DNA from: Scyliorhinus canicula
Lineage: Eukaryota
Assembly (NCBI RefSeq): GCF_902713615.1
Contig: NC_052160.1
Coordinates: forward strand, 137,558,737-137,622,736
Direction of reading: 5' to 3'
DNA length: 64,000 bases
The notes under the pieces are model-generated. The model saw only the letters and a list, made by a program, of their open reading frames with translations, did no database searches and had not been told where the DNA came from. The position numbers and the translations under genes are program-made. Below are positions 8,319 to 55,325 of the stretch, in pieces (position 1 is the first letter of the stretch; every line of letters begins with the position of its first letter).

Positions 8319-8367
8319 ATGAAAAACATTGAATTCACTATCGTCCTTGTCGCTCTTTGGTTACCAG
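8319..8367 (+). CDS. Gene 1 exon 1: signal peptide of CD300/pIgR-like receptor
   Basis: ATG...MKNIEFTIVLVALWLP(G), donor G|GTAAGG, phase 1 matches V1 acceptor giving ...LWLPGSDG/VVGPREV. Confidence 0.85.
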
Positions 8368-8611
8368 GTAAGGAAGCAAATAGAATGAGCCCACGTTGGA
8401 GAGATATCACTTTGCTAACTTTCTTTCTAGCTGCTTAAAAAAAAAATCTACTTTTATTTCACAGACTCGACTGTGGCCTGCCAGCCCTTAACTGTATAAT
8501 GCATGTGCCCAGAAAGCCGGGTGAAGTTTGATTTTCACAATGCAATGTATGATTAAATTCTGTAGATTTAACGAATCGTGTGCACATTTTCGATATGTTC
8601 ATTTGGAAATG

Positions 8612-9039
8612 GGGGACGCGATTCAGCCACTGCCTGGTGCACTGCCAGGGTGCCAGGTTGGCAGTGTTAGGCTGTCTGGGTGCCATGTTGGCACTGCTGG
8701 GGGTCAGGCCCGGGGTGGTGGGGGTGGTGGGGGGGGGGGTCCTTGTCAATGGGAGGTGGGGTGAGTGGGGGTGAGGGTTTCCAGGTGCCTCTTCAGGTTT
8801 GGCAGCATGAATAGGGGGGGGGGTGGCAGAGATTGGGGAGGGGTATGATGCCCCAATCCGTGAACAGCCGCTCCTGCTAGCGAGGTGAGCTGAGCTCGCC
8901 AGTGGCAAATCTCTCCAAGTGCTACCTCAGCCAGGAGAAACTCACCCGGCTAACAAAAACAGCAACGTGGCGTTGAATAGAGGGTTGGTTCTCCGCGACC
9001 CAGGAGCAGACTTAGTTTTAAGCCCGCCGAATCGCGGCC
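8612..9039. mobile_element. Harbinger-type non-autonomous element
   Basis: Ends GGGACGCGATTCAG / CGAATCGCGGCC are imperfect inverted repeats; GC-rich interior similar to 43208-43920. Confidence 0.5.
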
Positions 9040-9343
9040 GACAGCGATATGAGAATATTAATGATTAATAAGTTATGAGAGTCCAGAGCAGTAATGTACA
9101 ACCTGGGCGAGTGAGTGGGCCGCATGAGTGACCCTCCTTCACCTCAGGGGGTCACAAGATTGAAGTTGGTCTTGTTCACTAACCGTGATCCCATGAATAA
9201 GATTCAATACATTTCATACACGCCGAATATTTCATCAGGAGTTATGGAAAATGCTCAATCATTTATATATTAATAGAATTAGCACCAACTTCAAATGGTA
9301 AAAACCGAAGAAATCTTTACACTTTTGACAGAGATCCCAGCTC

Positions 9344-9526
9344 TCATAGATTATCATAGAATTTACAGTGCAGAAGGAGGCCATTCGGCCCATCGAGTCT
9401 GCACCGGCTCTTGGAAAGAGCACCCTACCCAAGGTCAACATCTCCACCCTATCCCCATAACCTAGTAACCCCACCCAACACTAAGGGCAAATTTGTACAC
9501 TAAGGGCAATTTATCATGGCCAATCC
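9344..9526 (-). mobile_element. V-SINE 3' fragment
   Basis: Reverse complement of the tail GATGGGCCGAATGGCCTCCTTCTGCACTGTAAATTCTATGATAATCTATGA. Confidence 0.8.
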
Positions 9527-9881
9527 TCTCACAGTCAATGTTTTGAGCAATCAGCACACACCTCACTTCACTCCCCCTCAGTCACACCGAGAGGAAAAGA
9601 AACTGCGCGATCAGCAAGGTATCTGGCGGCCCGCATTCAGAACCCAGGTGGTCAGCATGTGGCCTCCCCCCCCACCCCAGCCACAGGCTGCCCACCACTG
9701 GTCCAGAGCTGCTCACTCTACTTTAACAAAATCGCCAGTACAATCTTATGAATGTATTCACTATGTATCTGCTGAACATCAAAGGGCTGGATTCTCCGGT
9801 TCCACAACTCGCGACGGTGCGCTGGGATGAGTTCACTGAGTAATCTACTATTTCAAAAAACAGAATACTGTAGAATATGCA

Positions 9882-10084
9882 ACCAAAAGAGAAAATGCTG
9901 GAAAATCTCAGCAGGTCTGGCAGCATCTGTAGGGAGAGAAAAGAGCGAACGTTTCGAGTCCAGATGACCCTTTGTCAAAGCCCACTCATCTGGAAACCTC
10001 CCTACAGATATTCCTGCTGAGATTTTCCAGCATTTTCTCTTTTGCTTTCAGATTCCAGCATCCGCAGTAATTTGCTTTTATCCG
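9882..10084. mobile_element. Short Penelope-tail-derived inverted (hairpin) element
   Basis: CAAAAGAGAAAATGCTGGAAAATCTCAGCAGG and its reverse complement; 14-bp TSD CTGTAGAATATGCA at 9868-9881 and 10085-10098. Confidence 0.75.
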
Positions 10085-10220
10085 CTGTAGAATATGCAGC
10101 TTGACATATTCCTGAAAATAAAAAACCTTCAGAATTCACTTGCAACATTCATCGATTGCAAAGCTACATTTACTTATGGTAGTTAATTTGTATGATACAC
10201 AGTTCCTTATTGCATATTTA

Positions 10221-10566
10221 GGGGCAGCACGGTAGCATGGTGGTTAGCATAAATGCTTCACAGCTCCAGGGTCCCAGGTTCGATTCCCGGCTGGATCACT
10301 GTCTATGTGGAGGCTGCACGTCCTCCCCCTGTGTGCGTGGGTTTCCTCCGGGTGCTCCGGTTTCCTCCCACAGTCCAAAGATGTGCGGGTTAGGTGGATT
10401 GGCCATGCTAAATTGCCCGTAGTGTCCTAATAAAAGTAGGGTTAAGGGGGAGGGTGTTGGGTTACGGGTATAGGGTGGATACGTGGGTTTGAGTAGGGTG
10501 ATCATGGCTCGGCACAACATTGAGGGCCGAAGGGCCTGTTCTGTGCTGTACTGTTCTATGTTCTAT
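10221..10566 (+). mobile_element. Full-length HE1-like V-SINE with (GTTCTAT)n tail
   Basis: B box GGTTCGATTCC, V-core, 3' tail nearly identical to the young CR1 tail. Confidence 0.9.
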
Positions 10567-11630
10567 ATCTTTTATCTGTGCGATGCATGGTCTCCACAAG
10601 GGACAAAGGAGAAGAGAAACATGTTTCATAAACTAAACATTCTCCTGCTATGCGTAAAATACTTTAGTTTCGCAAAGTAGATTCATGGCTGATAAAGAAC
10701 TACAGAACCTGCTGAAAACCTGACAGGAGGAAAGAGGGAACATCTTAGCAACATTGCCTGGAAAGAACTTAGAAATAGCTGTGTTTGGGAAACCAGCTGT
10801 AAACCTAATTTAATTTTTTCAAAAATGCTGGTTAAAATGCTTCGAGAGGTATGTTTGCTTTGAGGCTACCTCAGGGCTAAGGTCATTGTGGTTCAATATT
10901 TAGAAGCAAAATTATAATGTCCCACAGGTAATACGACGGCCCTTGGCATAAACCATTGCATCGAAGAAATGCTTAAACATGCGTTGTTCCCGCTCTATGT
11001 ACAGTCTAAGTCTGTGACAGAAGCCAAGATTGGACCAGTCTGTAACTTACCGAAATGAAAGACACGGCAAACAATTATTTGAATAAGGGTTAGATCCAGG
11101 CTGTTTGTTATTCTTACAATCAAATGGAACTTCATGAAAGTCAATGACATTGATGGCCTGTGTAAAGTGCTGATTCATGGTCGGGACATGGTCAGCCTGT
11201 GATGCGGTCCTAGCTTTTGAAAGACAAGAACAAACAAGCGTCAGCCAAGTCATTTATAAAATCACTTTTTGCAAATATCGCACATGTTGTAAATTGTCAC
11301 TAACTTTGCCGAATAGATGTGAAAGTAATGTTATTATTCTTGTGGATATTTTAGAAGCCCCTTTACCCACAGAACATATTGCACTTTGAAAGAACACCCA
11401 GCTCGGTGTTTGATTGTTTTTCTTATTTGATATATAATTACTTTAGGCCCTTTCTGAATGTTTGAAGAATTGACACGCAAGTAATATGTTAACACGAATC
11501 TGAGTGTTATGGCTGATATACGAAATATAGGAGAATTCATTTTCTGTTGGAACTGGATTATTGCAAGCACATAGATATTCTTAAAGGCCAACTGACAGAA
11601 AGACAATTTGCCCAACTAACCTGTCCTGTC

Positions 11631-11948
11631 ACAGAATTCCTGAGGAGGCCATTTGGCCCATCAAGCCTGCATCAACCCTCCGAAAGAGCACTCTGCCTAG
11701 GCCCAATCCCCCACCCTATCCTTGTGACTCCACCAACCTGTGGGCACTTAGGGACAATTTATCACAGCCAATCCACCTAACCTGCATGCCTTTGGACTGC
11801 AGGAGTAAATCGGAGCACCCGGAGGAAACCCACGCAGACACGGGAGAAAGTGCAAACTCCACACAGACAGTGACCCGAGGTCGGATTTGAACCCGGGTCC
11901 CTGGCGCTGAGATGCAGCAGCGCTAACCATTGTGCTGCCGTGCCACCC
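11631..11948 (-). mobile_element. V-SINE
   Basis: Reverse complement of SINE head, core and tail. Confidence 0.85.
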
Positions 11949-11961
11949 TGTCTGAACCATT

Positions 11962-12613
11962 GGGTGTGATTCTCCGCACCCCACGCCGGGTGGGAGAATC
12001 GCGGGAGGGCCAGGCGAATCACGACACGCCGCCCTGGCATCCCCCGCGATTCTCCCAACCCCCAAAAATGGTGTGTCGCGTTTTTCAACAGGCCGACCAG
12101 CGATTCTCCGGCCCGGATGGGCCGGGCGGCGTGCTGAACCCGACCGGTTCACGCCGGCGCCAACTTTACCTGGTCTCTGCCGGCGTGAACAGCGCGCGAC
12201 CAGTGAGTATGGGGCCTGTGGGGGGCAGAGGGAGGATCGAGCACCACGGGCATGCTCAGCAGATGTCTGGCCCACGATCGGTGCCCACCGATCGTCAGGC
12301 CGGCGTCTCTAAAAGACGCACTCTATTCCCTCCGCCGCCCCGCAAGATCAAGCCGCCATGTTTTGCGGGACAGCGGAGGGGAAGACGGCAACCGCGCATT
12401 CACGGGTTGGCGCCGGCCAACCTGCGCATGTGCGGCTGATGTCAATTCGGCGCTGCCGGCCGCGTCATTCCCGTCGTGCCACTTTGACGCAAGCGTCAAG
12501 GCCGGGCGCTCAGGATTCACGCGCCGCCGCTCCTAGCCCCCCGGGGGGGCGAATAGGGGGTGAGGAGCGGCCTCCGACAGCGGAGTTTTTCTCCCTTTGT
12601 GAGAATTGCGGCC
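11962..12613. mobile_element. CpG-rich Harbinger-type MITE
   Basis: Ends GGGTGTGATTCTCC / GAGAATTGCGGCC; interior homologous to 14179-14402 (inverted) and 61450-62101. Confidence 0.7.
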
Positions 12614-12883
12614 ACTAAGCCTGACAGTTAATTCCATAGCCTCAGAATTCTGTGCGTGCAGAAGTTCTTTTGTCCTCTATTCAATGACTTCTCATTCGTG
12701 TCTCCTCAGCCACAAGGAACAACCTTCCTCTCGCTTTCCTGACCCATTCTTTCATAGTTTTAAATACTCCATCCCATAATCCATGCTATTCTGTTGAAGA
12801 ATACCCCAGCCTTTTTCTGGATTTGCATTTTGCCATGACTACCACCAAGGCCAAGAGACGTTCATCGACAGATCTCTGAGTCA

Positions 12884-13123
12884 GAGTTTGCACGTTCTCC
12901 CCGTGACATTGTGGGTTTCCTCCGGGTGTTCTAGTTTCCTCCCACAGTCCAAAGATGTGCTGTTAGGTGGATTGACCATGCTAAATTGCCCTCAGTGTCA
13001 AAAGAAAGGTTGGGTGGGGTTATGGGGATAGGCTGTAGGTTTGCGCTTCGGTAGAGTGCCCTTTCCAGGGGCCGGTGCAGACTCGATGGGCCGAATGGCC
13101 TCCTTCGGCAGTGTCAATTCTAT
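12884..13123 (+). mobile_element. 5'-truncated V-SINE
   Basis: Core GGGTTTCCTCCGGGTG...CCCACAGTCCAAAGATGTGC and tail GATGGGCCGAATGGCCTCCTTC. Confidence 0.8.
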
Positions 13124-13753
13124 CATTCACTCGAGCCATCTGGCTAACCAAGGCATGGAACATCCAAATCATTCATACACACAGTGAAAAAGAAGAGATC
13201 ACACAACAGAAATCTGAAGGACACTATTACATCTCTCCAGCTAATAAAAAAATGCATTTAGCTCTTACTGTGTTTTTCCCTGCCAACCAATATTTAATCC
13301 AGTTTGCTATTCTTCCGTGAGATACCACTTAACCTTCTCTGGTAGCCTTCCATGTGCCATTTTGAGCCGATCAAACATATCACTGCAGTCACAGGACGGA
13401 GGGTAGTAATTGTACCCAACAAACTTTGGAATCATGGGTATTGTGATGTCATAAATAATTGTCAAGTAAATGGGTCGAAGCATCAAAGCATTGGGGAAAC
13501 ACAGGGGATGCGATTCAACGGAAAAATATCGAAGTGACATTTTGGGCGAGATTGGCAGGGTGATTGCCGACGGCTGTGTTGGTGAGATTGCGGTCCGCAT
13601 TCAACGGCAATTGGTGCCGCAAATGAGCCCCACGAGCTTCTCGCCATTGCTGCTGTCTCACCGTCTTATTTGCCGCACTCTCGCCTCAGCGTCTCGCCGC
13701 TAACAAGGAGTGGCTTTTAAACACTCCCTCACCACTCGCACCCAGTCACAAGC

Positions 13754-14050
13754 ATGGCAGGGCGCAGACCTGCTCCTCAGTTTGGGGATGCCAACGTGGC
13801 CAGGTTTCCCGACGCCGCCAATGCAAGGCGGGACATCCCAAGGGTTTTGGAGGACCAGCGGCAGAGTCAGCAATGCCGCCTGGGAGACAGTGACAGCGGC
13901 TGTCAGTGCGGGCAGCCTGACCAGGAGGACCAGCGGCAGGGTCAGCAATGCCGCCTGGGAGACAGTGACAGCGGCTGTCAGTGCGGGCAGCGTGACCAGG
14001 AGGACCGCCGTCCAATGTTGGAAGACCAACAGATCCCACCAAGCTGCAAG
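13754..14050 (+). pseudogene. Frameshifted Harbinger-type Myb/SANT-like DNA-binding protein exon
   Basis: MAGRRPAPQFGDANVARFPDAANARRD, then after a frameshift SGRVSNAAWETVTAAVSAGSLTRRT..AVQC, ending at donor AAG|GTAAGT; matches the Myb/SANT-like pattern (W..V...V.A....RT..QC) of Harbinger second ORFs. Confidence 0.6.
13849..14006 (+). repeat. 75-bp tandem duplication (2 copies)
   Basis: GGAGGACCAGCGGCAG unit starts at 13849 and 13924; a partial third starts at 13999. Confidence 0.9.
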
Positions 14051-14178
14051 GTAAGTTACCACCTCTCTCTTGGCATCGGTTTTGACTGCTACCCCTCAGA
14101 TTCCCAACTACCCCCTCATGAGCCCGCCCCACAGATCACTGACTGACACCTCACCAGATTCACATAGGACAAGGCTAT

Positions 14179-14402
14179 GGGCGGGATTCTCCTCAACGGC
14201 TGACACCAGCGTGAAACCCAGAGACGGCGTTGGACGCCACTCCTCGCCCCCTATTCCCCCCCTGGGGGGGCTAGGAGGGGCGTTGCGGGTAACTCGGCTG
14301 CCAGGCCTTGATGCTGGCATCAAGGCGGCGAGCCGATAATGACGCGGCCGGCGGCGCCTTAGTGACGTCAGCCGCGCATGCGCGGTTGCCGTCTTCCCCT
14401 CC
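14179..14402. mobile_element. Harbinger-type MITE end
   Basis: Starts GGGCGGGATTCTCC; reverse-complement similar to about 12370-12590. Confidence 0.65.
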
Positions 14403-14405
14403 GCT

Positions 14406-14593
14406 ATGTCCAAATTACCTAATAGCACGTCTTTCAGAACTTGTGGGAGGAAAGCGGAGCACCCGGAGGAAACCCACGCAGACACAGGGAGAACGTGCAG
14501 ACTCCACACAGACAGTGACCCAAGCCGTGAATCGAAGCTGGGGCCCTGGCGCTGTGAAGCAACAGTGCTCACCACTGTGTTACCGTGCTGCCC
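14406..14593 (-). mobile_element. V-SINE fragment (B-type)
   Basis: Reverse complement of head and core. Confidence 0.8.
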
Positions 14594-14652
14594 TATTTCA
14601 GTAAGGCCTTCAGAGGATTTCCAGCGTGCTGATTTGGGGATGGAATTGTCCA

Positions 14653-14975
14653 GCTGCACGGTGGCATAGTGGTTAGCACTACTACCTCACAGCGCCAGGG
14701 ACCCAGGGTCAATTCCGGCCTCGGGTGACTGTCTGTGCAGAATGCACATTCTCGCCGTGTCTGCGTGGGTTTCCTCCGGGTGCTCCGGTTTCTTCCCACA
14801 GTCCAAAGACATGCAGGTTAAGTGGATTGGCCATGATTAATTGCCATTTATTGTCCGAAAAGGTTAGGTGGGGTTACGGGGAAAAGGCAGGTACGTGGGC
14901 CTGGGTAGAATGCTCTTTTAGTGGGTCGGTGCAGACTCAATGGGCTAAATGGCTTCTTTCTGCAAGGTCTATCAG
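14653..14975 (+). mobile_element. V-SINE
   Basis: CACGGTGGCATAGTGGTTAGC head, core and degenerate tail. Confidence 0.85.
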
Positions 14976-14977
14976 AT

Positions 14978-15335
14978 TATGAGGGGCATGGGTAGAGTGG
15001 ATGGGCAGCCACTCTTTCCCAGGGTGGAGGGGTCAGTCACCAGGGGGCATAGGTTCAGGGTCCATGGGGCAAAATTTAAAGGAGCTTTGTGAAGCAGCTT
15101 ATTTACGCAGAGGGTGGTGAGTGCCTGGAACACGTTACCAGGGGAGGTTGTGGAAGCAGATACATCAATGGCATTCAAAAGGCATCTTGACAAATGCATG
15201 GACAGGATGGGTACAGAGGGATACGGCACAAGGAAGTGCTGAGGGTTTTGGCCAAGGTTGGTATCATGACCGGTACAGGCTTGGAAGGCTGAAGGGCCTG
15301 TTCCTGTGCTGTATTGTTCTTTGGGATTCTATAGA
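14978..15335 (+). mobile_element. CR1 LINE 3' fragment
   Basis: ATGAGGGGCATGGGTAGAGTGG...GAAGGGCCTGTTCCTGTGCTGTATTG, homologous to the ORF2 C-terminus and tail. Confidence 0.8.
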
Positions 15336-15467: not shown

Positions 15468-15797
15468 GTTCAGACGGAGTAGTGGGACCAAGGGAGGTGA
15501 ATGGAAGATTAGGAGGATCCATCACTATCAACTGCCAATACAACATACCAAGTAACAGGAATTCTGAGAAGTATTGGTGCAAGGGAGGACGAAGATTTTC
15601 ATGCACAGTATTAATGGACACTGGGAGATCACAGCAGGGAAGAAGCAACAGGCTGTTCATTGCGGACAACCAAACCAGTGGAATATTTTCCATAACAATG
15701 AGGCAATTGTCGCTGGGAGACACGGGATGGTATTGGTGCGGGATAGCATCACTGGGAAACGATGAGATGACTTCTGTCAAATTGAATGTCCTTGAAG
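15468..15797 (+). CDS. Gene 1 exon 2: Ig V-set domain 1 (CD300/pIgR family)
   Basis: Acceptor CTAACAG|, donor GAAG|GTAAGC, phase 1-1, 330 bp; GGSITINCQY..KYWCKGGRRFSC (C-x7-C extra disulfide)..DNQTSGIFSITMRQL..DTGWYWCG..VKLNV. Confidence 0.95.
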
Positions 15798-15852
15798 GTA
15801 AGCCAAATAATTAATCTGAATTTATTGACCTTGAGTTTACTATTAGCACTTC

Positions 15853-16263: not shown

Positions 16264-16611
16264 GGGGCAGCACGGTAGCATGGTGGTTAGCATAAATGCT
16301 TCACAGCTCCAGGGTCCCAGGTTCGATTCCCGGCTGGGTCACTGTCTGTGTGGAGTCTGCACGTCCTCCCCGTGTATGCGTGGGTTTCCTCCGGGTGCTC
16401 CGGTTTCCTCCCACAGTCCAAAGATGTGCGGGTTAGGTAGATTGGCCATGCTAAATTGTCCGTAGTGTCCTAAAAAGTAAGGTTAAGGTGGGGTTGGGTT
16501 ACGGGTATAGGGTGGATACGTGGGTTTGAGTGGGGTGATCATTGCTCGGCACAACATCGAGGGCCGAAGGGCCTGTTCTGTGCTGTACTGTTCTATGTTC
16601 TCTGTTCTATG
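16264..16611 (+). mobile_element. Full-length HE1-like V-SINE
   Basis: Near-identical to 10221 copy; GTTCTAT tail. Confidence 0.9.
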
Positions 16612-17882: not shown

Positions 17883-18206
17883 CCAGCTCATCTGAGCTAA
17901 GACAAGTGAACGGGACATTAGGAGAAGCTGTCACTCTGAAGTGTCAGTATCAAGTACCATATTACCAGCATCATGATAAGTACTTGTGCAAGGGCTCAGA
18001 GAGGAAATTGTGCACCATGATTGCGAACACTCAGGTAAAGAATGCAGACATCAGTGGAAGGATAATTGCTGTGGATAACAAGACCAGTGGAATATTTGCT
18101 GTGACCATGACTGAACTATCCATGAAGGACGAGGGGCTTTATTGGTGCGGAATAACAATCCTCGGCTACGACAAAATGATTCCCTTACAACTGAATGTTT
18201 TAGAAC
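17883..18206 (+). CDS. Gene 1 exon 3: Ig V-set domain 2 (CD300/pIgR family)
   Basis: Acceptor TTTATTCTTGCAG|, donor GAAC|GTAAGC, phase 1-1, 324 bp; GEAVTLKCQY..KYLCKGSERKLC..DNKTSGIFAVTM..DEGLYWCG..LQLNV. Confidence 0.95.
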
Positions 18207-19034: not shown

Positions 19035-19474
19035 ATGCCAAGATCTCATTGCTGTCAGGCCTTTATATTTAAGACTCCTAGACAGTCACCCCATTAATTT
19101 TTAATGATTGTCTTTCTGCGCGTGATCCTGATCGCATCATCACATTATCGAGGAGAGCCTGGGAACATTGCGAACGGGAAGCTCGCAAGCATAAATCCCG
19201 TTTTTGACATCTCGCAGTACTATGCAACCACGATGGGATGTGCGCCCACAATTTACAGGCGTTTACCCCTAGTTAATGTTAATAAATCAATTATAACTTT
19301 AACTAACTGGTTTCACCTGAAAATTATTTTTATCACTGTCCATGCGCTGCTTTTTGTACTTCGAAATGTGTTGTGTTTTTCCACGAACGTGAAGATGAAG
19401 TTGGCTTGTTAAGTGTGGCAAGTATCTGGTCTATTTGTATTCCCGATGGTTGACTTATTCAGTATCAGTGACTT

Positions 19475-19803
19475 ATGGTGGTTAGCATAAATGCTTCACA
19501 GCTCCAGGGTCCCAGGTTCGATTCCCGGCTGGGTCACTGTTTGTGCGGAGTCTGCACGTCCTCCCCGTGTGTGCGTGGGTTTCCTCCAGGTGCTCCGGTT
19601 TCCTCCCACAGTCCAAAGATGTGCGGGTTAGGTGGATTGGCCATGCAAAATTGCCCTTAGTGTCCTAAAAAATAAGGTTAATGGGGGGGTTGTTGGGTTA
19701 CTGGTATAGGGTGGATACGTTGGCTTGAGTAGGGTGATCATTGCTCGGCACAACATCGAGGGCCGAAGGGCCTGTACTGTGCTGTACTGTTCTAAGTTCT
19801 AAG
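19475..19803 (+). mobile_element. HE1-like V-SINE
   Basis: Head slightly truncated; CR1-like tail. Confidence 0.85.
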
Positions 19804-20427: not shown

Positions 20428-20488
20428 TTCTTAAAACAACCACTCTGCCCAAAGAATCTCAGAAAACAGTCAGCTTGGAAAGTAAAAG
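20428..20488 (+). CDS. Gene 1 exon 4: short stalk
   Basis: Acceptor TTATTGCTTTCACAG|, donor AG|GTAAAT; (L)LKTTTLPKESQKTVSLESK(S); phase 1 to 2 bridges V2 (phase 1) and the TM exon (phase 2). Confidence 0.75.
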
Positions 20489-25896: not shown

Positions 25897-26384
25897 ATAT
25901 TATGAGCAGCAAATTTCCACAAATAACAAATAGATAAATGACGAGTTAACAGGTCACAAAGATCAATCAAGAACACAAGAGACAGGAGGAAGTGTGGACC
26001 ATTCAGCCCGTCGAGTCTCCCCCCGCCATTTAGTATGATCTCCACCGACCTTGGGCTTCAACTCCACTTCCCTCTCCGTACCCCATGCCCCCACCTCCCT
26101 ACCCAGATTCCCTGAGACACCAAAAATCTGTCTATCCCAGATTTAAAGGTGCTCAACGATGGAGCACCAAAATGCTCTGGGATAGAAAATTCCCAAGATT
26201 CACAAACCTGAGATTGAAGGAATTTCTCCTCATCTCATTCCTAAATGATCGGCCCCTTTGCCCCGAGGCTGTGCCTCTGTGTTTTAGATTCCCCAAGCTG
26301 TGGAATCTCGCAGTGCCCACCCCATCAAACCCCTTCAGAATCTTGTACATTTCAAAGAGATTGGCAGAAATGTATGCAAATTTT

Positions 26385-27262
26385 GAGTGTTTACGTAGGA
26401 AGTCCCGCACCTGCAGATACCTGAATTTGTTTCCCCTCGCCAACCCAAACTTCTCCTCCAGCGCCCTCATACTCGGAAAGCTCCCCTCTATAAACATATC
26501 CCCCATCCTCTCAATCCCTGCTCTCCGCCATATCCAGAACCCCCCATCCATACTTCCCGGGGCGAACCGATGATTATTACAGATTGGGGACCAGACCGAT
26601 GCTCCCTCTGCTCCCACATGTCTCCTCCATTGCCCCCAGCCTCTCAGGGCCGCCACCACCACGGGGCTGGTGGAGTACTGTGCCGGCGGGAACGGCAGAG
26701 GAGCAGTTACCAACGCCCCCAGACTGGTGCCCTTACATGAAGCCGCCTCCATACGCTCCCATGCCGACCCCTCCCCCACCACCCACTTCCTAATCATGGC
26801 TATATTTGCCACCCAGTAACAGTTACTAAAATTTGGCAGCGCCAGCCCGCCCTCTCCCCGACTCCGCTCAAACATTACCTTCCTTACTCGCGGGGTCTTG
26901 CCCGCCCAAACAAAGCCAGAGATCACTTTGTTGACCTGTTTAAAAAAGGATCATGGAATAAAGATGGGGAGACATTGAAACACGAACAGGAATCTTGGGA
27001 GGACCGTCATCTTCACCGTCTGCACTCTCCCAGCTAATGACAACGGGAGCGCGTCCCACATCTGAAAATCATCCTTCATTTGGTCTACTAGTCGGGCCAG
27101 ATTTAATTTTTGCATCCGGTCCCATTCCCGCGCCACTTGAATGCCGAGGTACCTAAAGCTTCCCCCTACTAACCTAAACGGCAGCTCCACCAATCGCCTC
27201 TCCTGTCCCCTCGCCTGGACCGCAAACATCCCTACCTCCCTTCCTCTGCACGTCGTTAGTCC
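26385..27262 (-). mobile_element. L1-clade LINE ORF2 fragment (post-RT region)
   Basis: FRYLGI...[44 protein letters not shown]...GGLALPNF...YW; typical L1 C-terminal region with one in-frame stop at 26951-26953. Confidence 0.85.
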
Positions 27263-27954
27263 TGGCCACGTGCAGCCACATGTCGGCATCGCTGCTGCTG
27301 CTCAATTGCCATCAAAAGAACTGCCAGCTCAACTGGCTACATCATTCTCTCAAACCACAAACTGAAAGGAAGAGAACAGGAAAGCGGGTGATGAGGATTC
27401 CTGACAAAGTCCTGACCTCTCAGGATCCGGGACATCCATCCCTGCTAATCCCCATGATAGCACCTTTCCAATGATCCTCACTCCTTCCCCTGTCACACAG
27501 TGGACAATTTCCCACATTTGCTCCTCTTAACTGCACCTGAATGAAGGGTTTTAACCCTTGAGAACCCCAGCGGGCAGCGTGACTCCCCCAAGGGTGAGGA
27601 GTGAGGGCAGTTGAGTGCATTCGTGGACCTGTGCTCTGACCTAATGGGGGAACGAGATGCTGCCACTTGTCATGTCCTGAACGGGGTGACTAATGTGCGC
27701 TGAAACCCACCTGCCTTGCATTAGGGGCAATACCTGTGACACCTCTCTGTTATGAGTGTCAGCCTGGAGTTCAATGCTTGGGGGCTAAGCTCCCAAATAT
27801 TTTGATTGACATAAATAACCAAGTTAACAAAATCAAATGAACTGAGAGACAAATTAAAGGGAAAGTCCCCAAAGGGAAACTGCTTTTAACTCCCAACTAT
27901 TTTGTTTAACACAAATAACTAAGTAAACAAAATCAAATGAACTTAGGAACTTAG

Positions 27955-28307
27955 GGGGCAGCACGGTAGCATGGTGGTTAGCATAAATGCTTCACAGCTC
28001 GTGTATCCCAGGTTCGATTCCCGGCTGGGTCACTGTCTGTGCAGAGTCTGCACGTCCTCCCCGTGTGTGCGTGGGTTTCCTCCGGGTGCTCCAGTTTCCT
28101 CCCACAGTCCAAAGATGTGGGGGTTAGGTGGATTGGCCATGTTAAATTGCCCGTAGTGTCCTAAAAAAAAAAGTAAGGTTAAGGGGGTTTGTTGGGTTAC
28201 TGGTATAGGGTGGATACGTGGGTTTGAGTAGGGTGATCATGGCTCGGCACAACATCGAGGGCCGAAGGGCCTGTTCTGTGCTGTACTGTTCTATGTTCTA
28301 TGTTCTA
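27955..28307 (+). mobile_element. Full-length HE1-like V-SINE
   Basis: Near-identical to 10221 copy, (GTTCTAT)n tail. Confidence 0.9.
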
Positions 28308-28989: not shown

Positions 28990-29150
28990 TGCAATGAATG
29001 CTCAGTGAGGGGGGAAGATTGTTCACGCCGGACTGCAATGAATGCTCAGTGAGGGGGGAAGATTGTTCACGCCGGACTGCAATGAATGCTCAGTGAGGGG
29101 GGAAGATTGTTCACGCCGGACTGCAATGAATGCTCAGTGAGGGGGGGGAA
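28990..29150 (+). repeat. 44-bp minisatellite, about 3.7 copies
   Basis: Unit TGCAATGAATGCTCAGTGAGGGGGGAAGATTGTTCACGCCGGAC starts at 28990, 29034, 29078, 29122. Confidence 0.95.
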
Positions 29151-29270
29151 GTCCCAGCAGGAGGGCTTGCTAATGAGATGTTAAATCATCCAAATAATGT
29201 TCCTGACATTCCTGGGTGGGGAGCCTATAGATATAAGACATCAACTCTCTTATCTTCTGAGATGCGTCAT

Positions 29271-29579
29271 TAGAATCATAGAATTCCAACATTGCGGAAG
29301 GAAGGTCTGCACCCACCCTCCGAAAGAGCACCCTACGTAAGCCCATATCCCCAGCCTCTCCCTGTAAACCCAGCTAAACCTTTGAACACCTAAGGGGGAG
29401 TTTAGTATAGCCAATGCACTTAACTTGCACATCTTTGGACTGTGGGAGGAAACTGGAGCACCCGGAGGAAACCCACGCAGACACAGGGAGAAAGTGCAAA
29501 CTCCACATGGACACCCAAGGCTAGAATTGAACCGGGGCCCCTGGAGCTGTGAGGCAGCAGTGCTAACCACTGTGCCGCC
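29271..29579 (-). mobile_element. V-SINE
   Basis: Reverse complement of head, core and tail. Confidence 0.8.
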
Positions 29580-30147
29580 TCCAGGTGTGCATCTTCTCAT
29601 TCCGGGAAATGTAATGCAGCTCGCGCGAATCCCGATCCTGCGGGATTTTGCACCCGCGTCGCCATTCTCGCTGACGGCTAATGCCGTCTCAAAATTCCAC
29701 CCAATACATTTTAACCATCTTAAGGCCGATAAATGAACCAAATTTGGCTGATGACTGATTTGGAAGTTCACTTTCAGCTGATGAAAATGGGTGAAAACGT
29801 AAGAGAAGTGCAGCAGAGATTTTTTTAAAAACTGAGCACAAACTGATTATTAGTTTGTGTTCCTCCTCATTATTTCAGTTGCATTATTGGGCCACCAGGG
29901 GTGGTGTTTGGTATAAAGGTTCCATTTGGGGCAACGATAATAAATACTACCCACTTCATCTGTTGTAAGAAAGGCTTATTAGTAATGGGTGATATCTAAA
30001 TTGTTGACAAAATGATGAGCAGTAGTTAATACCTAGATAGTCACATTGGATGATGATGATAAAGATCTTGAAACACCCAAGTTGTTAAGATATGAAGTTG
30101 TGTGACATCTCAAAGATTAGTTTGCTACACTTCAGCTGCAATATATA

Positions 30148-30313
30148 GGGCTGGATTCTCTGCCGTCGGGATGCTCCATTTTGCCGGCAGCCCGGGGGTT
30201 TCCCGATGGCGTGGGGCTGCCCCACAATGGGAAACCCCATTGACCAGCCAGAGTAACAGAGTATCCCGCCGGCGTGCTGAAACAGAAATGTAGCGGGGCG
30301 GAGAATCCAGCCC
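30148..30313. mobile_element. Complete 166-bp Harbinger-type MITE
   Basis: Perfect 13-bp TIR GGGCTGGATTCTC/GAGAATCCAGCCC, ATA on both flanks; related copy near 25260-25410. Confidence 0.85.
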
Positions 30314-30665
30314 ATAATATCTGGGCAGTGAGAAAATTTTGCCTTGTCCTTCCCCTGTCTTGGTTATGACTGTGGGAGGCGGAATAGGCAGGTCAGAAGA
30401 TGAGAGATTGAGGGTTTTATATCTGTAGGTTTACCTGTATTTTTGAGTCTCTCAGAACTGCTACTACTTTGCCCAGGTATGCTGCTTTGAGGCTTATTAT
30501 TTTGGACAATATTTGTAGAAAAAGAACAGCTACATTGCTTCAGTTATTGCCTTATGGTGACTCGCCAAAAAACACAAACTATTATTGGTGGTCTGCATTG
30601 TCTGCCACATTCAATAGACACTTGATAGCCTTGAATTTGTGCTTCAGCTGGTTTTCCTTGTCTCA

Positions 30666-30990
30666 GGGGCAGCACAGTAGCACACACGTGGTTGGCACTG
30701 TGGCTTCACAGCGCCAGGGTCCCAGGTTCAATTCCCCGCTGGGTCACTGTCTGTGCGGAGTCTGCACGTTCTCCCCGTGTCTGCGCGGGTTTTCTCCGGG
30801 TGCGGAGTTTCCTCCCACAGTCCAAAGACCTGCAGGTTAGGTGGATTGGCCATGCTAAATTGCCCCTTTAGTGTCCAAAAAGGTTAGGAGGAGTTATTGG
30901 GTTACGGGGATAGAGTGGAAGTGAGGACTTAAATGGGTCGGTGTGAACTCGATGGGCCGAATGGCCTCCTTCTGCACTGTATGTTTTATG
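30666..30990 (+). mobile_element. V-SINE
   Basis: Head, core and tail recognisable. Confidence 0.85.
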
Positions 30991-31492
30991 TAATACTATG
31001 TTAGCAGTGCTAATAATGACAATTAAGGCTCCTTGTTCAGTATGTTACTGTATTTTCAATGCTACATCATCCCACAGTTCCCTCCGCTTGAGACCCTCTT
31101 TCAGAAGGTCATCGATTTCTGTCTTAAAGCAAGAATGAAACTTTGAGGTTAGGAAAGGTATACAATTTCAGTGTGAGCAGGCTGCATTACAATTCCCAGT
31201 TTGTGCTGCCACTCCAGAACATGCACTTTTAAAAAAGAAAATGACAGAATCGGCACAGGCCAATCCACAATGAATATGGTCATCACACCCACCATCAGTC
31301 TGAACTCCATCCAAGAGTTCATTGGCCACTGGAGTCAGTGCAAGAAAGAACAGGAATCAAAGTGGTTATTTTATTGATCGAACCCAGTCAAGTGTTTTTT
31401 GCTTCAGGGGATGTTTAGTCTAATCCACTGCTGATGATGTAAGCCAGTGAATTCTGGAGCCTCAGTTGTGTTCACAGGGTCCCAGGACACAG

Positions 31493-31830
31493 TCATAGAA
31501 TCGTAGAATTTACAGTGCAGAAGGAGGCCTTTCGGCCCATCGAGCCTGCACTAACCCTCTGAAAGAGCACCCTGCCTAGGCCCACACCCCCACTCTGTCC
31601 ACGTAACCTAACCTAACCTGTACATCAAGGGGCAATTGATTATGGCCAATCCACCTAACCTGCACATCTTTAGACTGTGGGAGGAAACCGGAGCACCCGG
31701 AGGAAACCCACGCAGACACAGGGAGAAAGTACAAACCCCCACAGATGGTCACCCGAGGCTGGAATTGAACCTGGATCCCTAAAGCTGTGGGGTAACAGAG
31801 CTAACTAACCACTGAGCCACCGTGCCGCCC
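31493..31830 (-). mobile_element. V-SINE
   Basis: Reverse complement of head, core and tail. Confidence 0.85.
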
Positions 31831-32515
31831 TGAGTCGCAGTAGGGCCAGCCCTGTAATGAGGCAGTGTGTGGTTGGTCTTTCGCTGGGCTCTTTGGCTGC
31901 TTGACAACTTGTGCAGTGGCATGGATTACACAGCCTATTGTTACTCTAACATTATTTTACTCCACAACTGTAGCAACGTTGGCTCACCAGCTGGGTATGA
32001 ACCAACTAAGGTTTATTTGCAACCTACTGGCTGGAATTCTCTGGCCATTTAGATTCTCTGTTCCCGCCGGCAGCATATCCCTGTTCCCGGGTTTCCTGAT
32101 GGCGTGCGGTGGCTTCAATGGGAAATCCTATTGACAAGCGTTGGGAGCAGGGGATTCTGCCAGCAGCGAACGGCACGTCACTGGGTAACATGTGGCTGGG
32201 GGACCGGAGAATCCAGACTCGTATATCTTACAGCCTTACTGCGTCGTGACTACCAGTCAGCATCGATCTGAGGCAAAAGCCCCCGACCCCGACCCTAGTC
32301 CCCTGATTGTTTTTTTTCGGGTCATGAGACCCTGTCGGCCAATCACCCCCTTTATCGGGGCTAGACACAGACGCTGCAATTTTCTTTCTCCTTCAAGTAT
32401 GTATCCAATTCCCTTTAGAAAGTTAAGATGGAAACTGTGTCCACCACCCTTTCAAAATGCAGATACCACATCATAACACGGGCTGCCAAAATGTATTTCA
32501 CCAATTTCTTTCACA

Positions 32516-32955
32516 TTGGATTGGATTTGTTTATTGTCACGTGTACCGAGGTTTCATGTACTTAATGATCTGCGAGCGGCTCAACAGATCATTAAGTACA
32601 TGAAATGAAAACGAAATAGAAGAAAATTCATAATAGGGCAACACAAGGTACACAATGTAACTACATAAGGACCGGCATTGGATGAAGCATACAGGGTGTA
32701 GTGTTAATGAGGTCAGTCCATAAGAGGGTCATTTAGGTATCTGGTAACAGTGGGGAAGAAGCCGTTTTTGAGTCTGCTCGTGCGTGTTCTCAGACTTTTG
32801 TATCTCCTGCCCGATGGAAGAGGTTGGAAGAGTGAGTAAGCCGGGTGGGAGGGGTCTTTGATTATGCTGCCCGCTTTCCCCAGGCAGCAGGAGGTGTAGT
32901 CGGAGTTGATGGACGGGAGGCAGGTTCGTGTGGTGGGAGGCAGGTTCGTATTGCT
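32516..32955 (-). mobile_element. Rex1/Babar-type LINE 3' fragment
   Basis: Minus-strand translation KAGSIIKDPSHPAYSLFQPLPSGRRYKSLRTRTSRLKNGFFP, typical of the Rex/Babar ORF C-terminus. Confidence 0.7.
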
Positions 32956-33900
32956 TCTTAGTTTTGGTTCAGGTGCCAAACATATTTCAATGTCTCCTTC
33001 CGTGATCAAACTAAATCACAAACGAATGTGACCGTGCAGATCGTCCTCTAACAGTGGATGAATCACATGCATGATAGATTATTAACACTATGTAAAGGAA
33101 ACTAGCTGACCTCTAACCAGCAGCCTGCTTGTGGATATTATGTGAGGACAGGATTGGAGTGAATCTGCGATTCTTCTTGTTGGTGGCCATTATCTAAGGA
33201 TATTGGAAAGGAAAATTAGCCATCAGACAGCTATCTGGTCTCCGTCGGAAACCTGGACAGAATCTTTTTTTAAATTCACTAATGGGATGTGGACGTCACT
33301 GGCTGGGCCAGCATTTGTTACCCATCCCTAATTGCCCTTAAACTGAATGGCTCGCTAGGCCATTTCAGAGGGCATTTCAGAGTCAACTGCTTTGCCAGGG
33401 TCCTGGAGTCACGTGTAAGCCAGACCGGGTAAGGTTGGCAGATTTCCTTCCCTAACGGACACGAGAGAACCAGATGGGTTTTTGCGACTATCGACAATGA
33501 TTTCATGGCCATCATTAGACTTTTAATTCCAAATGTTTACGTAATTCAAATTCCACCATCTGCCACGCTGGGATTTGAACCCAGGTCCCCAGTGACAATG
33601 CCATTGCGCCACCGCCTTCCCACGCGACGTAGGGTCCCGCCCGTCGGTGGAATGTTCTGGTTCTGCCAAAGTCAATGGACTTTTTAATAGCTCGGGCATC
33701 TTGCAGACTCGCCCCAGCTGCAACAGGGCCATAAGGTTCCATCCCCTGCTCCTACAGATTGGCATCCTGCAAAGATCAGTGCTTTCAGCGGGAGAGATGG
33801 GGAGAAGATTGGGAAATTCAAAATTGAAGGCTTTATTGCTCAGGGAATGAAAATGAGTTTCAATTCAGAGAAATTAACTTTCCTCTCTTCATCTTCACAG

Positions 33901-34010
33901 CACCTCAAGTTTTTCCATGATACTAGTGGTAACCGTGCTCGGAGTTCTTATTGTCATGTTCCTTGTTGCTGCTGTTGTTGTCATAAGATGCAGAAACCAA
34001 ATTGCAGCTG
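33901..34010 (+). CDS. Gene 1 exon 5: transmembrane domain
   Basis: Acceptor TTCCTCTCTTCATCTTCACAG|, donor CTG|GTAAGT; TSSFS-MILVVTVLGVLIVMFLVAAVVVI-RCRNQIAA; no charged TM residue; phase 2 to 1. Confidence 0.85.
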
Positions 34011-34900
34011 GTAAGTTACAGAATTTCGAGAATTCCAATTCCAAGTGCAAAGGAAAACCTTTCCCTTTCCAGCTGGGAAAAGTGTAGGGTGAGTGAGGCA
34101 GGAAATTTCCTCAAGAGCTGCTCCCGTGCAATTGGCCGGAATTGCCTCCAGGGAGGGGAGGATTCATCGGAGGTCATGGGGTTACTGCCGATTGTGGCGA
34201 TGAAAAGTGTGAGACAGCAGCCCCGAGGAACTTCCCAGCCTCATTCACAGTTACAAATCTGACCGAGCTGAGGCAGGATCAATGTGCAAATGTTTCTCCT
34301 TCTGCTGTAGTGGGATATAAAATAAACTCTGCGAGGCCACTCGCTTGTCACAGGCCCAAACAGCTTCGGTCAGCTGCACGGGCCAGAGCCTTGTGCCAAT
34401 GCTACATGTAAAGAAAAAGAAAATACTTGTGTTTAAGTGGCACCATCCACCTCAGAACATTCCAAAGGGCTTTGCCGCCAATTAAGTACTTTTGTAATGC
34501 TGTAAGTGCAGGAAATGTAACAAGCTTACCACAAAGCAGCTCATCAGCATTTTGGTGAAGTTGGATGAGGGTTAAACATTAGTCGGGACACTGGGGAACG
34601 TTTTCCTGCTCACCTTCGATATGGGAGAGCGGAGAAGCTGTAACATTCACCAAAGGCTTTCAGATTCCTCGGTTTATCATCTTATCCAAAATATAGAATC
34701 CCGAATGGTGCTTCGCTGCCTGAGTGATGCCCTAGAGTGTCAGGCTGGACCTTTGTGTTCGAGTCTGTGGAGTGGGACTTGAATCCACAACTTACTGACT
34801 CGGAGTGTTACCAACTGAGGCACAGCTGACACCTGCAGGAATCTCTCCAGCAGCAGTAGCCAAGCTGAACAATGAATAAGAACATGCCTTGACCCTACAG

Positions 34901-34953
34901 ATTTAAATGAAGCCATAGAAAGTGAACAATATACAATGCAGCACACACAAGGA
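34901..34953 (+). CDS. Gene 1 candidate cytoplasmic exon A
   Basis: Acceptor CCTTGACCCTACAG|, donor GGA|GTAAGT; phase 1 to 0; (D)LNEAIESEQYTMQHTQG. Confidence 0.5.
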
Positions 34954-35140
34954 GTAAGTGTGCAAAGAGCTGGTCGAAATATGATGTTCCAAACAGACGA
35001 GAGTGGAAAGTTTAAGTTTGATATATTTGAATTCGATTAAAATCAATGCTCAAATATCATGGACTACATTTCATGTTTCAATTAACAAAATCAGTAAATC
35101 AGTACCATGGGTTCGAATGAAATTGCAGTCAGCAGTTAAG

Positions 35141-35363
35141 TAATAATCTTTATTGGTGTCACAAGTAGGTTTACATTAACACTGCAATAAAGTTGAATAA
35201 AGTGAAAATCCCCTAGTCACCACACTCCGGCGCCTGTTCGGGTACACTGAGGGAGAATTCAGAATGTCCAATTCACCTAACAGCACGTCTTTCGGGACTT
35301 GTGGGAGGAAACCGGAGCGCCCGGAGGAAACCCACGCTGACACGGGGAGAACGTGCAGACTCC
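35141..35363 (-). mobile_element. Truncated V-SINE, B-type
   Basis: Reverse complement of core and B tail. Confidence 0.8.
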
Positions 35364-35655
35364 AGTACCATACAGAATACAGTAGATTCATTTGATTACA
35401 TTGGAATTAACAATAGAGGTGACTCTTTAAGCGATCCATTCCAACAGGTACCACAAAGGTGGAAATTTACCCAGATAATTTAAAAATAAATGGGTAATGT
35501 GCTAATCAAAGTGGCGCCCAGAAGCGTGCCATACACTTTTCCTAATTCCTGTATGCTAAGATTAAATATTGCTAAGATTAAATATTGCAAAGAATAATTT
35601 CTGATCTTGTATCTAAAACGTGCTGTTCAGTTAATTGGATTTATGTCATTCTTAG

Positions 35656-35711
35656 GTGAGAAGGAATTACCACATACAGAAGAAGAATCTAACTCACTCT
35701 ACAAAGATCTG
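35656..35711 (+). CDS. Gene 1 candidate cytoplasmic exon B with ITIM-like motif
   Basis: Acceptor GTCATTCTTAG|, donor CTG|GTAAGA; phase 1 to 0; (G)EKELPHTEEESNSLYKDL, SLYKDL fits (S/I/V/L)xYxx(L/V). Confidence 0.65.
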
Positions 35712-55320: not shown

Positions 55321-55325
55321 TGGAA

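What the first reader, a model, noticed from the sequence alone, without database searches (positions are those of the whole stretch)
8319..35711. Two-V-domain pIgR/CD300-like receptor in a shark, hidden from the ORF track
Seen in the sequence: leader, V1, V2, stalk and TM exons join in frame (phases 1,1,1,2) with canonical GT-AG sites over about 26 kb, giving MKNIEFTIVLVALWLPGSDG-V1-V2-LLKTTTLPKESQKTVSLESKSTSSFS-TM-RCRNQIAA-Tyr tail. All V domains have the C-x7-C second disulfide of the CD300/pIgR/TREM group. Established: teleost pIgR and pIgR-like proteins have two V domains, skates have related MDIR receptors, and to my knowledge no clear pIgR orthologue is established in cartilaginous fish although they secrete IgM. 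Inference: this could be a polymeric-Ig-binding or inhibitory receptor of that lineage.
Basis: partly seen in the sequence, partly recalled or inferred. Interest (0 to 1): 0.8.

Follow-up and report, generated by a model that had tools for sequence, protein, structure and literature searches.

The report
Catshark two-domain CD300/pIgR-like receptor gene
This is a real, expressed small-spotted catshark gene for a cell-surface immune receptor with two antibody-like domains; public annotation already lists it as "polymeric immunoglobulin receptor-like", and nothing yet shows that it carries antibodies.

Summary
The exon chain is correct. Leader, V1, V2, stalk, TM and first cytoplasmic exon join in frame at GT-AG sites with the stated phases. 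The gene does not end at 35711: a last coding exon lies at 42427-42555, giving 7 exons and 352 aa.

This protein equals residues 310-661 of the RefSeq Scyliorhinus canicula model "polymeric immunoglobulin receptor-like". That model wrongly fuses it to the upstream gene. So the gene is not hidden from public annotation.

One-to-one orthologues exist in eight sharks. Rays and a chimaera have more distant ones. All share the signal peptide and a unique Tyr-bearing tail, and the sharks keep the same neighbouring genes.

Per domain, the closest solved structure is mouse CD300LF, not pIgR D1. In a domain tree, V1 and V2 sit in a cartilaginous-fish clade apart from tetrapod pIgR-D1/FCAMR-D1, but AU tests reject no alternative.

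The ITIM-like SLYKDL occurs only in Scyliorhinus. The tail resembles no pIgR tail.

Best reading: a conserved, non-adaptor-coupled CD300/MDIR-type receptor that signals or internalises through tail tyrosines. pIgR orthology is unsupported, and Ig binding is untested.

Earlier follow-ups of this scan reached the same verdict on neighbouring DNA of this cluster.

The parts
8319..8367 (+). Exon 1: ATG and signal peptide MKNIEFTIVLVALWLP+G, donor CCAG|gtaagg, ends in phase 1
   Evidence: The MK.IEF leader is conserved in all shark orthologues, with related leaders in rays (MKYIHF/MKFIQL).
15468..15797 (+). Exon 2: V1 domain. It has C39-C107 and C54-x7-C62, and CDR1 reads IPSNRNSEKYW
   Evidence: Pfam V-set E = 1.5e-16. 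Splice sites. 100% match to P0159. AF2 pLDDT is 80-90 with a helical turn at residues 44-48.
17883..18206 (+). Exon 3: V2 domain. It has C147-C215 and C162-x7-C170, with Leu in place of the core Trp (KYLCK)
   Evidence: Pfam V-set E = 4.8e-13. Splice sites. Held at 0.97-1.00 of words in five probable-RNA runs.
20428..20488 (+). Exon 4: Thr/Ser-rich stalk LLKTTTLPKESQKTVSLESK, ends in phase 2
   Evidence: 95% identical to S. torazame.
33901..34010 (+). Exon 5: STSSFS, then uncharged TM MILVVTVLGVLIVMFLVAAVVVI, then RCRNQIAA; ends in phase 1
   Evidence: AF2 helix at residues 257-291.
35656..35711 (+). Exon 6: GEKELPHTEEESNSLYKDL. SLYKDL fits both SxYxxL (ITIM) and YxxPhi; most sharks have NPVY here
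42427..42555 (+). It holds the nearly invariant Y322 and Y339
   Evidence: tblastn with P0001 (78%, E = 1e-21). Acceptor ccaaag|TCT. Conservation.
34901..34953 (+). Candidate exon that is not used (AG..GT, DLNEAIESEQYTMQHTQG). Including it would shift the frame of exon 6
   Evidence: Absent from RefSeq P0159 and from every orthologue.

Best explanation
A 7-exon, 34-kb gene of Scyliorhinus canicula (window 8319-42555, + strand) encodes a 352-aa type I membrane glycoprotein. Its parts are a signal peptide, two V-set Ig domains of the double-disulfide CD300/pIgR/TREM kind, a short Thr/Ser stalk, an uncharged transmembrane helix and a 69-aa disordered tail with tyrosines. It sits in a tandem cluster of CD300/pIgR-like (MDIR-type) receptor genes. 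Unlike typical cluster members, it is a conserved one-to-one orthologue across cartilaginous fish. Its CDR-like loops are as conserved as its framework, which points to a conserved, probably endogenous, ligand. Shown: gene structure, fold, family, conservation and transcription. Inferred: the ligand is bound by the V1 (and V2) loops. Because the TM has no charged residue, the receptor does not pair with DAP12/FcRgamma-type adaptors. It instead acts through its own tail: phosphorylation of the conserved tyrosines (Y322 DITYD, Y339 FPxYI) and, in most sharks, an NPxY/YxxL motif. These would recruit SH2/PTB proteins and/or the endocytic machinery. In Scyliorhinus the first motif has become SxYxxL, an ITIM consensus, so there the signal is probably inhibitory. 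The nearest functional analogues are CD300LF/CD300A and the zebrafish PIGRL proteins, which sense lipids or other self ligands, rather than pIgR.
For: Exons, phases and GT-AG sites. Exact identity to RefSeq P0159 residues 310-661. V-set domains. AF2 model with two Ig domains (pLDDT 80-90), a TM helix and a disordered tail. Exon-specific presence in RNA runs. Orthologues at 58-68% identity in Cetorhinus, Mustelus, Heterodontus, Chiloscyllium, Stegostoma, Rhincodon and Heptranchias (S. torazame 77% over the aligned part), 42-43% in rays and 38% in Callorhinchus, with a shared leader and tail. Conserved gene order, deduced from fused RefSeq models. Loops as conserved as framework (CDR1 0.72 and CDR3 0.69, against 0.72-0.80). 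Best per-domain PDB match is CD300LF. Nearest domains not known to be chondrichthyan are CD300-type. Language-model look-alikes of the TM plus tail are TREM-like transcript 1, C1orf162, LST1 and CMRF35-like molecules, not pIgR (lead only).
Against: No canonical ITIM, ITSM or ITAM is conserved across the orthologues, so 'inhibitory' holds at best for Scyliorhinus. The tail matches no known family. No ligand, cell type or tissue is known, because run labels were coded. Splice junctions are supported by the RefSeq model and by orthologues, not by reads that I laid myself (one search failed). The V1 CDR1 resembles the Ig-binding CDR1 of pIgR D1/FCAMR.
Confidence: 0.6

Rival explanations
1. It is the cartilaginous-fish functional counterpart, or even the orthologue, of pIgR/FcalphamuR. 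In this reading V1 binds polymeric IgM (with or without J chain), and the tail's NPxY/YxxL-type motifs drive endocytosis or transcytosis.
For: It has two tandem V domains, like teleost pIgR, and whole-ectodomain Foldseek hits are led by pIgR structures. The V1 CDR1 (SNRNSEKYWC) has N-R at the same distance from the Cys as tetrapod pIgR-D1/FCAMR ((V/A)N(R/K)H(D/T)RKYWC), is one residue longer than the CD300 type, is predicted as a helical turn and is conserved in sharks. The gene is single-copy and conserved, unlike fast-evolving paired receptors. AU tests do not reject V1 with pIgR/FCAMR D1 (p = 0.33). NPVY...L is ancestral in sharks. No pIgR is known in sharks (PMC4016189, PMC13337447).
Against: The ML tree puts V1 and V2 together in a chondrichthyan clade, apart from pIgR D1 and D5. 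Per-domain scores favour CD300LF. Ray and chimaera orthologues have the ordinary 13-residue CD300-type CDR1, so the pIgR-like loop looks derived in sharks. The position matching pIgR R34 is Glu. The tail shows no similarity to rabbit, bird or amphibian pIgR tails. The NPxY tyrosine is lost in several species. The field holds that elasmobranch J chain serves only IgM polymerisation (PMC10801876).
Confidence: 0.1
2. It is just one more interchangeable member of a lineage-specific CD300/MDIR expansion, a classical ITIM inhibitory partner of nearby activating genes, with no individual conserved role.
For: It lies in a tandem array: an upstream 1V ITIM gene, a downstream 1V gene at 48-58 kb, and many more according to earlier scan notes. 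SLYKDL fits the ITIM consensus. V-exon copy number varies between species: 3 V in S. torazame and 4 in Leucoraja.
Against: There are clear one-to-one orthologues with the same leader, stalk, TM and unique tail in all shark orders sampled, and recognisably in rays and a chimaera. The ITIM is not conserved. The loops are conserved rather than diversified. The tail differs from the VTYATV/TEYSTV tails of the neighbouring genes.
Confidence: 0.2
3. The true product is the 661-aa conjoined protein of the RefSeq model, that is, the upstream 1V receptor fused to this gene.
For: RefSeq models in S. canicula, Stegostoma, Chiloscyllium, Mustelus and Heterodontus all join the two genes.
Against: The fusion would bury a TM segment and a second signal peptide inside one chain. 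The ATG at 8319 and its leader are conserved, and they start the model in S. torazame (GCB70550.1), Heptranchias, Rhincodon, Leucoraja and Callorhinchus. In other species the same gene is fused instead to the downstream neighbour, which is the mark of an annotation artefact in tandem arrays.
Confidence: 0.05

Closest known systems
CD300LF / CLM-1 and the mammalian CD300 (CMRF35-like) family
   Same: It has a V-set domain with the extra C-x7-C disulfide. It gives the highest per-domain score of all solved structures (88.5 bits for V1 and 58.7 for V2). It is a type I receptor with an uncharged TM and a Tyr-bearing tail, and it lies in a tandem gene cluster.
   Different: It has two V domains instead of one. 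Its tail has no conserved ITIM or ITSM and matches no CD300 tail. Orthology to the mammalian cluster is unresolved (AU p = 0.42).
pIgR (tetrapod, 4-5 domains) and teleost two-domain pIgR (PDB 5f1s)
   Same: It belongs to the same double-disulfide V-domain superfamily. It shares the two tandem V domains with teleost pIgR. The V1 CDR1 shares N-R...KYWC with tetrapod D1. Database pipelines name it 'pIgR-like'.
   Different: Its domains do not group with pIgR D1 or D5 in the ML tree. Per-domain scores are lower: about 49 bits per domain to 5f1s and 57 bits to human D1. The tail is unrelated. No binding or epithelial expression data exist.
Skate MDIR (modular domain immune-type receptors)
   Same: MDIRs are a cartilaginous-fish multigene family of modular Ig receptors with similarity to CD300, TREM and pIgR (PMC3031540). 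From my own recollection of the uncited, unchecked 2006 Cannon et al. description, MDIR domain number is variable and some members (MDIR4/5) lack canonical signalling motifs.
   Different: No published MDIR sequence could be retrieved, so identity with a specific MDIR type was not tested (one search returned none by name).
Zebrafish PIGRL proteins
   Same: They have two to several pIgR-like V domains, some with inhibitory tails, and form a multigene cluster. That they were reported to bind phospholipids rather than Ig is from my own knowledge of Kortum et al. 2014, not checked here. PIGRL is listed as a family in 10.1101/2022.04.21.489081.
   Different: Teleost pIgR-like domains form their own clades in the tree. 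No orthology is shown.
FCAMR (Fc alpha/mu receptor)
   Same: The CDR1 motif of FCAMR D1 ((P/S)AN(K/R)HDRKYWC) resembles V1. Mammalian FCAMRs appear among the weak hits of the ray orthologue.
   Different: FCAMR D1 clusters with pIgR D1, not with shark V1.

Membership tests
Double-disulfide V-set superfamily (CD300 / pIgR / FCAMR / TREM / NKp44) | V-set fold with the canonical Cys pair plus a second C-x6-9-C disulfide after strand C | tested here: met
   Pfam V-set E = 1.5e-16 and 4.8e-13. CKGGRRFSC and CKGSERKLC follow KY[WL]. The best PDB hits are pIgR, CD300LF, CD300A and NKp44. AF2 Ig folds have pLDDT 80-90.
pIgR (orthologue) | N-terminal domain orthologous to pIgR D1, with a CDR1 of 15-16 residues carrying (V/A)N(R/K)H(D/T)RK(Y/F)WC | tested here: inconclusive
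   The ML tree separates V1 from the D1 clade (99/96*), but the AU test does not reject their union (p = 0.33). The CDR1 has 14 residues, shares N-R and KYWC, has Glu at the Arg position, and is absent from ray and chimaera orthologues.
pIgR (orthologue) | Cytoplasmic tail homologous to pIgR tails (sorting and endocytosis signals) | tested here: not met
   phmmer of the 69-aa tail against all fetched proteins, including rabbit, bird and amphibian pIgR, found only chondrichthyan orthologues. There is no Pfam match.
pIgR (orthologue) | Position in the PIGR-FCAMR-FCMR syntenic block | not testable with these tools
   The window and the reachable flanks (up to 10 kb) hold only V-set receptor genes. 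Notes of the scan give no flanking marker genes.
pIgR (function) | Binds polymeric Ig/J chain and is expressed on mucosal epithelium | not testable with these tools
   There is no binding data, and the RNA runs are coded without tissue labels.
CD300 / CMRF35-like | Single CD300-type V domain as the closest relative, with membership of the CD300 clade | tested here: inconclusive
   The highest per-domain similarity is to CD300LF. However, there are two domains, the base of the tree is unresolved, and the union with tetrapod CD300 is not rejected (p = 0.42).
Inhibitory (ITIM) receptor | Conserved (S/I/V/L)xYxx(I/V/L) in the tail and an uncharged TM | tested here: inconclusive
   The TM is uncharged. 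One motif, SLYKDL, is present in S. canicula and S. torazame only. Five sharks have NPVY/NPIY there, and the Tyr is lost in four species.
MDIR (skate) | Sequence match to published MDIR1-5, and membership of a large chondrichthyan cluster of modular Ig receptors | not tested
   The cluster context is met. No MDIR-named sequence was retrieved.

The most novel reading that the evidence does not exclude
This single-copy, deeply conserved two-V receptor, with a shark-specific pIgR-D1/FCAMR-like CDR1 and an ancestral NPxY...L tail, is the long-sought Ig-binding (IgM/J-chain) endocytic or transcytotic receptor of cartilaginous fish. It would have arisen either as the true precursor of pIgR/FCAMR or by convergence.
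Probability: 0.08. Interest if true: 0.85.

Novelty: new member of a known kind. Interest (0 to 1): 0.33.

Why it matters
How sharks move antibody into gut, gill and bile is an open question, because no pIgR or classical Fc receptor is known in them (PMC4016189, PMC13337447). Current opinion is that their J chain serves only polymerisation (PMC10801876). Most catshark 'pIgR-like' genes are fast-evolving paired receptors. This one stands out as a conserved one-to-one orthologue with conserved binding loops and a unique tail. That makes it a reasonable first candidate for a simple binding test with IgM, IgW, IgNAR and lipids. As it stands, it is an ordinary, already auto-annotated family member. 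The practical gains are a corrected stand-alone gene model (352 aa) in place of the chimeric RefSeq protein, and the finding that its 'ITIM' is not conserved.

Tried and rejected
- A word-indexed protein search with the V2 ORF (length window 100-320 aa) found nothing.
- An exact look-up of the 352-aa protein in assemblies found no record, so no stand-alone gene call exists in that collection.
- NCBIfam gave no family.
- Pfam on the TM plus tail gave only sub-threshold TM noise.
- The last protein search, with the skate orthologue, returned no MDIR-named entry. Cluster look-ups of ten batoid or shark representatives also gave no MDIR names.
- The Flowers et al. 2021 paper on pIgR emergence is not held, and 'ddIgSF' is in no held paper. 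My recollection that it describes a cartilaginous-fish cluster syntenic to the pIgR locus could not be checked.
- Scan notes gave no flanking marker genes for synteny.
- The Foldseek PDB ranking of the two-domain model favours multi-domain pIgR simply because it can align two domains. I rejected it as a discriminator.
- The candidate exon 34901-34953 was rejected as part of the main transcript.
- ITYDV was considered as a second ITIM and rejected, because position +3 is Glu.

Full report
**Observation**

The window has no N and is 46% G+C. On the + strand I read each exon boundary directly.
- Leader: 8319-8367, ATG...CCAG|gtaagg.
- V1: 15468-15797, cag|GTTCAG...TTGAAG|gtaagc.
- V2: 17883-18206, cag|CCAGCT...TAGAAC|gtaagc.
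- Stalk: 20428-20488, cag|TTCTTA...TAAAAG|gtaaat.
- TM: 33901-34010, cag|CACCTC...CAGCTG|gtaagt.
- Cytoplasmic exon: 35656-35711, tag|GTGAGA...GATCTG|gtaaga.

The quoted peptides are exact.

**Completing the gene**

An exhaustive HMMER search with V1 found 2844 relatives. The best is Scyliorhinus torazame GCB70550.1. Mapping it back on the window confirmed every exon. It also revealed a last coding exon at 42427-42555 (SFRDVHGQGITYDVETSTAIFQREEFPVYIYDKHQHEQMDPV, then TAA).

The seven exons give a 1059-nt CDS and a 352-aa protein with introns of 1.6-13.4 kb. This protein is an exact substring (residues 310-661) of the RefSeq protein 'polymeric immunoglobulin receptor-like [Scyliorhinus canicula]' (661 aa). 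The encoding record is assembly GCA_902713615.2. So the window is small-spotted catshark, and every junction agrees with the public model.

The RefSeq model joins this gene to the upstream single-V ITIM receptor through an in-frame reading of the 5' region (8169-8318). I regard this as an artefact, for three reasons.
- The ATG and leader at 8319 are conserved, and they start the models in several species.
- A fusion would bury a TM segment and a signal peptide inside the chain.
- In Heptranchias, Cetorhinus and Rhincodon the same gene is fused instead to its downstream neighbour.

A candidate exon at 34901-34953, which another first-reader note flagged as a possible splice switch, is used in neither RefSeq nor any orthologue.

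**Expression**

Indirect evidence exists.
- The V2 exon is held at 0.97-1.00 of its sampled words in five probable-RNA runs from four studies.
- It is held at 0.00 in sister runs of the same studies.
- The same positive runs hold only 0.17-0.24 of the 5.3-kb stretch that includes introns.
- In that stretch, exons make up 13.5% and four copies of an abundant SINE-like repeat about 20%.

This pattern fits a spliced, sample-restricted transcript.

**What it is**

An AlphaFold2 model built on ten orthologues shows two Ig domains (pLDDT 80-90), a TM helix at residues 257-291 and a disordered tail. The TM (MILVVTVLGVLIVMFLVAAVVVI) has no charged residue. There are three N-glycosylation sequons.

Against solved structures, multi-domain pIgR tops the list only by summing four domains. 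Single-domain comparisons are more informative.

| Domain | Mouse CLM-1/CD300LF | Human pIgR D1 | Teleost two-domain pIgR, 5f1s (two stretches) |
|---|---|---|---|
| V1 | 88.5 bits | 56.9 bits | 98 bits |
| V2 | 58.7 bits | 37.5 bits | 84 bits |

Outside the proteins I know to be chondrichthyan, the nearest domains are CD300-type, for example rodent CLM-3 at about 90 bits.

**Conservation**

Orthologues were found with the following identities.

| Group | Species | Identity |
|---|---|---|
| Sharks | Cetorhinus, Mustelus, Heterodontus, Chiloscyllium, Stegostoma, Rhincodon, Heptranchias | 58-68% |
| Shark | S. torazame | 77% over the aligned part (residues 25-352) |
| Rays | Leucoraja, Hemitrygon | 42-43% |
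| Chimaera | Callorhinchus | 38% |

All are auto-named 'polymeric immunoglobulin receptor-like' or 'uncharacterized'. They share the MK.IEF leader, the stalk, the TM and a tail found in no other fetched protein. The fused models show the same gene order in the sharks: a single-V ITIM gene, then this gene, then a single-V mucin-stalk ITIM gene.

The CDR-like loops are as conserved as the framework among eight sharks: CDR1 0.72 and CDR3 0.69, against 0.72-0.80. Domain number changes by exon duplication. S. torazame has three V domains, Leucoraja has four near-identical ones, and Hemitrygon has two near-identical ones.

**pIgR or not**

I cut 91 V domains from named proteins and built an IQ-TREE tree.
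- The set included rabbit, bird and amphibian pIgR; bird FCAMR; amphibian pIgR-like proteins; teleost pIgR-like proteins; Polypterus PIGR; mammalian and reptile CD300; and cartilaginous-fish genes.
- Tetrapod pIgR D1 and FCAMR D1 form a starred clade (99/96*).
- Shark V1 and V2, with the ray and chimaera domains, form their own clade (94/94).
- The base, which includes CD300, pIgR D5 and the teleost clades, is a polytomy.

With 108 columns the data are weak. AU tests reject none of three alternatives.
- V1 with D1: p = 0.33.
- V2 with pIgR D5: p = 0.14.
- The chondrichthyan clade with tetrapod CD300: p = 0.42.

The V1 CDR1 (CQYNIPSNRNSEKYWC, 14 residues between the Cys) does recall tetrapod pIgR-D1/FCAMR (C[FY]YPPTSVNRH[DT]RKYWC, 15-16 residues). 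CD300 has 13 residues and no N-R. The model predicts a helical turn there. But ray and chimaera orthologues have the 13-residue CD300-type loop, so the resemblance is more simply a shark-lineage novelty. The tail has no similarity to any pIgR tail and matches no Pfam family. Language-model look-alikes of the TM plus tail are leukocyte receptor or adaptor tails (TLT-1, C1orf162, LST1, CMRF35-like). These scores are only leads.

**Signalling**

Only SLYKDL fits the ITIM consensus. ITYDV does not, because position +3 is Glu. In the orthologue alignment this site varies.
- NPVY/NPIY...L in five sharks of both superorders, which is an NPxY plus YxxL pattern.
- NSLY in the two Scyliorhinus species.
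- NPVF in Heterodontus, NPVD in Mustelus, NSVT in Hemitrygon and DPVF in Callorhinchus.

The nearly invariant tail positions are F312-R313-D314, Y322 (DITYD) and D335-F336-P337-x-Y339-I340. No canonical ITIM, ITSM or ITAM is conserved. I therefore infer a receptor that acts through its own tail tyrosines, by SH2/PTB docking and/or internalisation. An inhibitory reading is justified only for Scyliorhinus.

**Context and literature**

Papers state that no pIgR or classical FcR homologue was found in sharks (PMC4016189), and a 2026 review repeats this (PMC13337447). A 2024 paper holds that elasmobranch J chain serves only IgM polymerisation (PMC10801876). MDIRs of the clearnose skate are described as a family similar to CD300, TREM and pIgR (PMC3031540).

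From memory only, Flowers et al. 2021 reported a cartilaginous-fish cluster of such 'double-disulfide' domains; the paper is not held. Earlier follow-ups of this scan on neighbouring windows of the same cluster reached the same general verdict: real genes, already in RefSeq, CD300/MDIR-type. I treated these as leads. My own tests agree.

**Verdict**

The gene is a new member of a known kind and is already auto-annotated. The pIgR idea is neither supported nor excluded. What sets this gene apart is its deep one-to-one conservation, its conserved loops and its uncharacterised tail, which make it a sensible candidate for a direct binding test.

Noticed in passing
window 48265-58270 (+): leader-like exons 48268-48363 and 56239-56307, V exon 57944-58270: This is the next receptor gene downstream, with a single CD300-type V domain (Cx7C, V-set E = 6.7e-11). 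It is orthologous to the C-terminal halves of the fused Heptranchias and Cetorhinus models, which continue into a mucin-like stalk and a tail with VTYSTV/VKYSTI ITIMs. RefSeq starts a gene about 5.7 kb after this gene's stop. Two alternative leader-like exons are present.
   Followed up: partly
window 8169-8318 and RefSeq protein P0159: The RefSeq model of S. canicula fuses the upstream single-V ITIM gene to this gene, as do models in Stegostoma, Chiloscyllium, Mustelus and Heterodontus. Other species fuse this gene to the downstream one. This is a recurrent conjoined-gene artefact in the tandem array, and it inflates the annotated proteins to 577-766 aa.
   Followed up: partly
29 places across the window, e.g. 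10237-10524, 16280-16561, 19400-19760, 27971-28259: A SINE-like repeat of about 290 bp is present in 29 copies (70-93% identity) on both strands, mostly in introns. It produces the recurring pseudo-ORF 'GPRFDSRLG...CGVCTFSPCLRGFPPGAPVSSHSPK' in the ORF list and adds to RNA word counts.
   Followed up: partly
window 26153-27289 (-): Two adjacent ORFs (257 and 112 aa) look to me, by eye, like the C-terminal part of a LINE reverse-transcriptase polyprotein. They lie inside the 13.4-kb intron 4.
   Followed up: no
window 34901-34953 (+): This is a well-formed AG...GT candidate exon encoding DLNEAIESEQYTMQHTQG (with a YxxM). It fits the incoming phase but would shift the frame of the next exon. It is not used in RefSeq or in any orthologue.
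   Followed up: yes
orthologues P0001 (S. torazame), P0002/P0153 (Leucoraja), P0026 (Hemitrygon): V-domain copy number differs between species through recent exon duplication: V2 twice in S. torazame, four near-identical V in Leucoraja, and two near-identical V in Hemitrygon. In rays the V1/V2 distinction seen in sharks is absent.
   Followed up: partly
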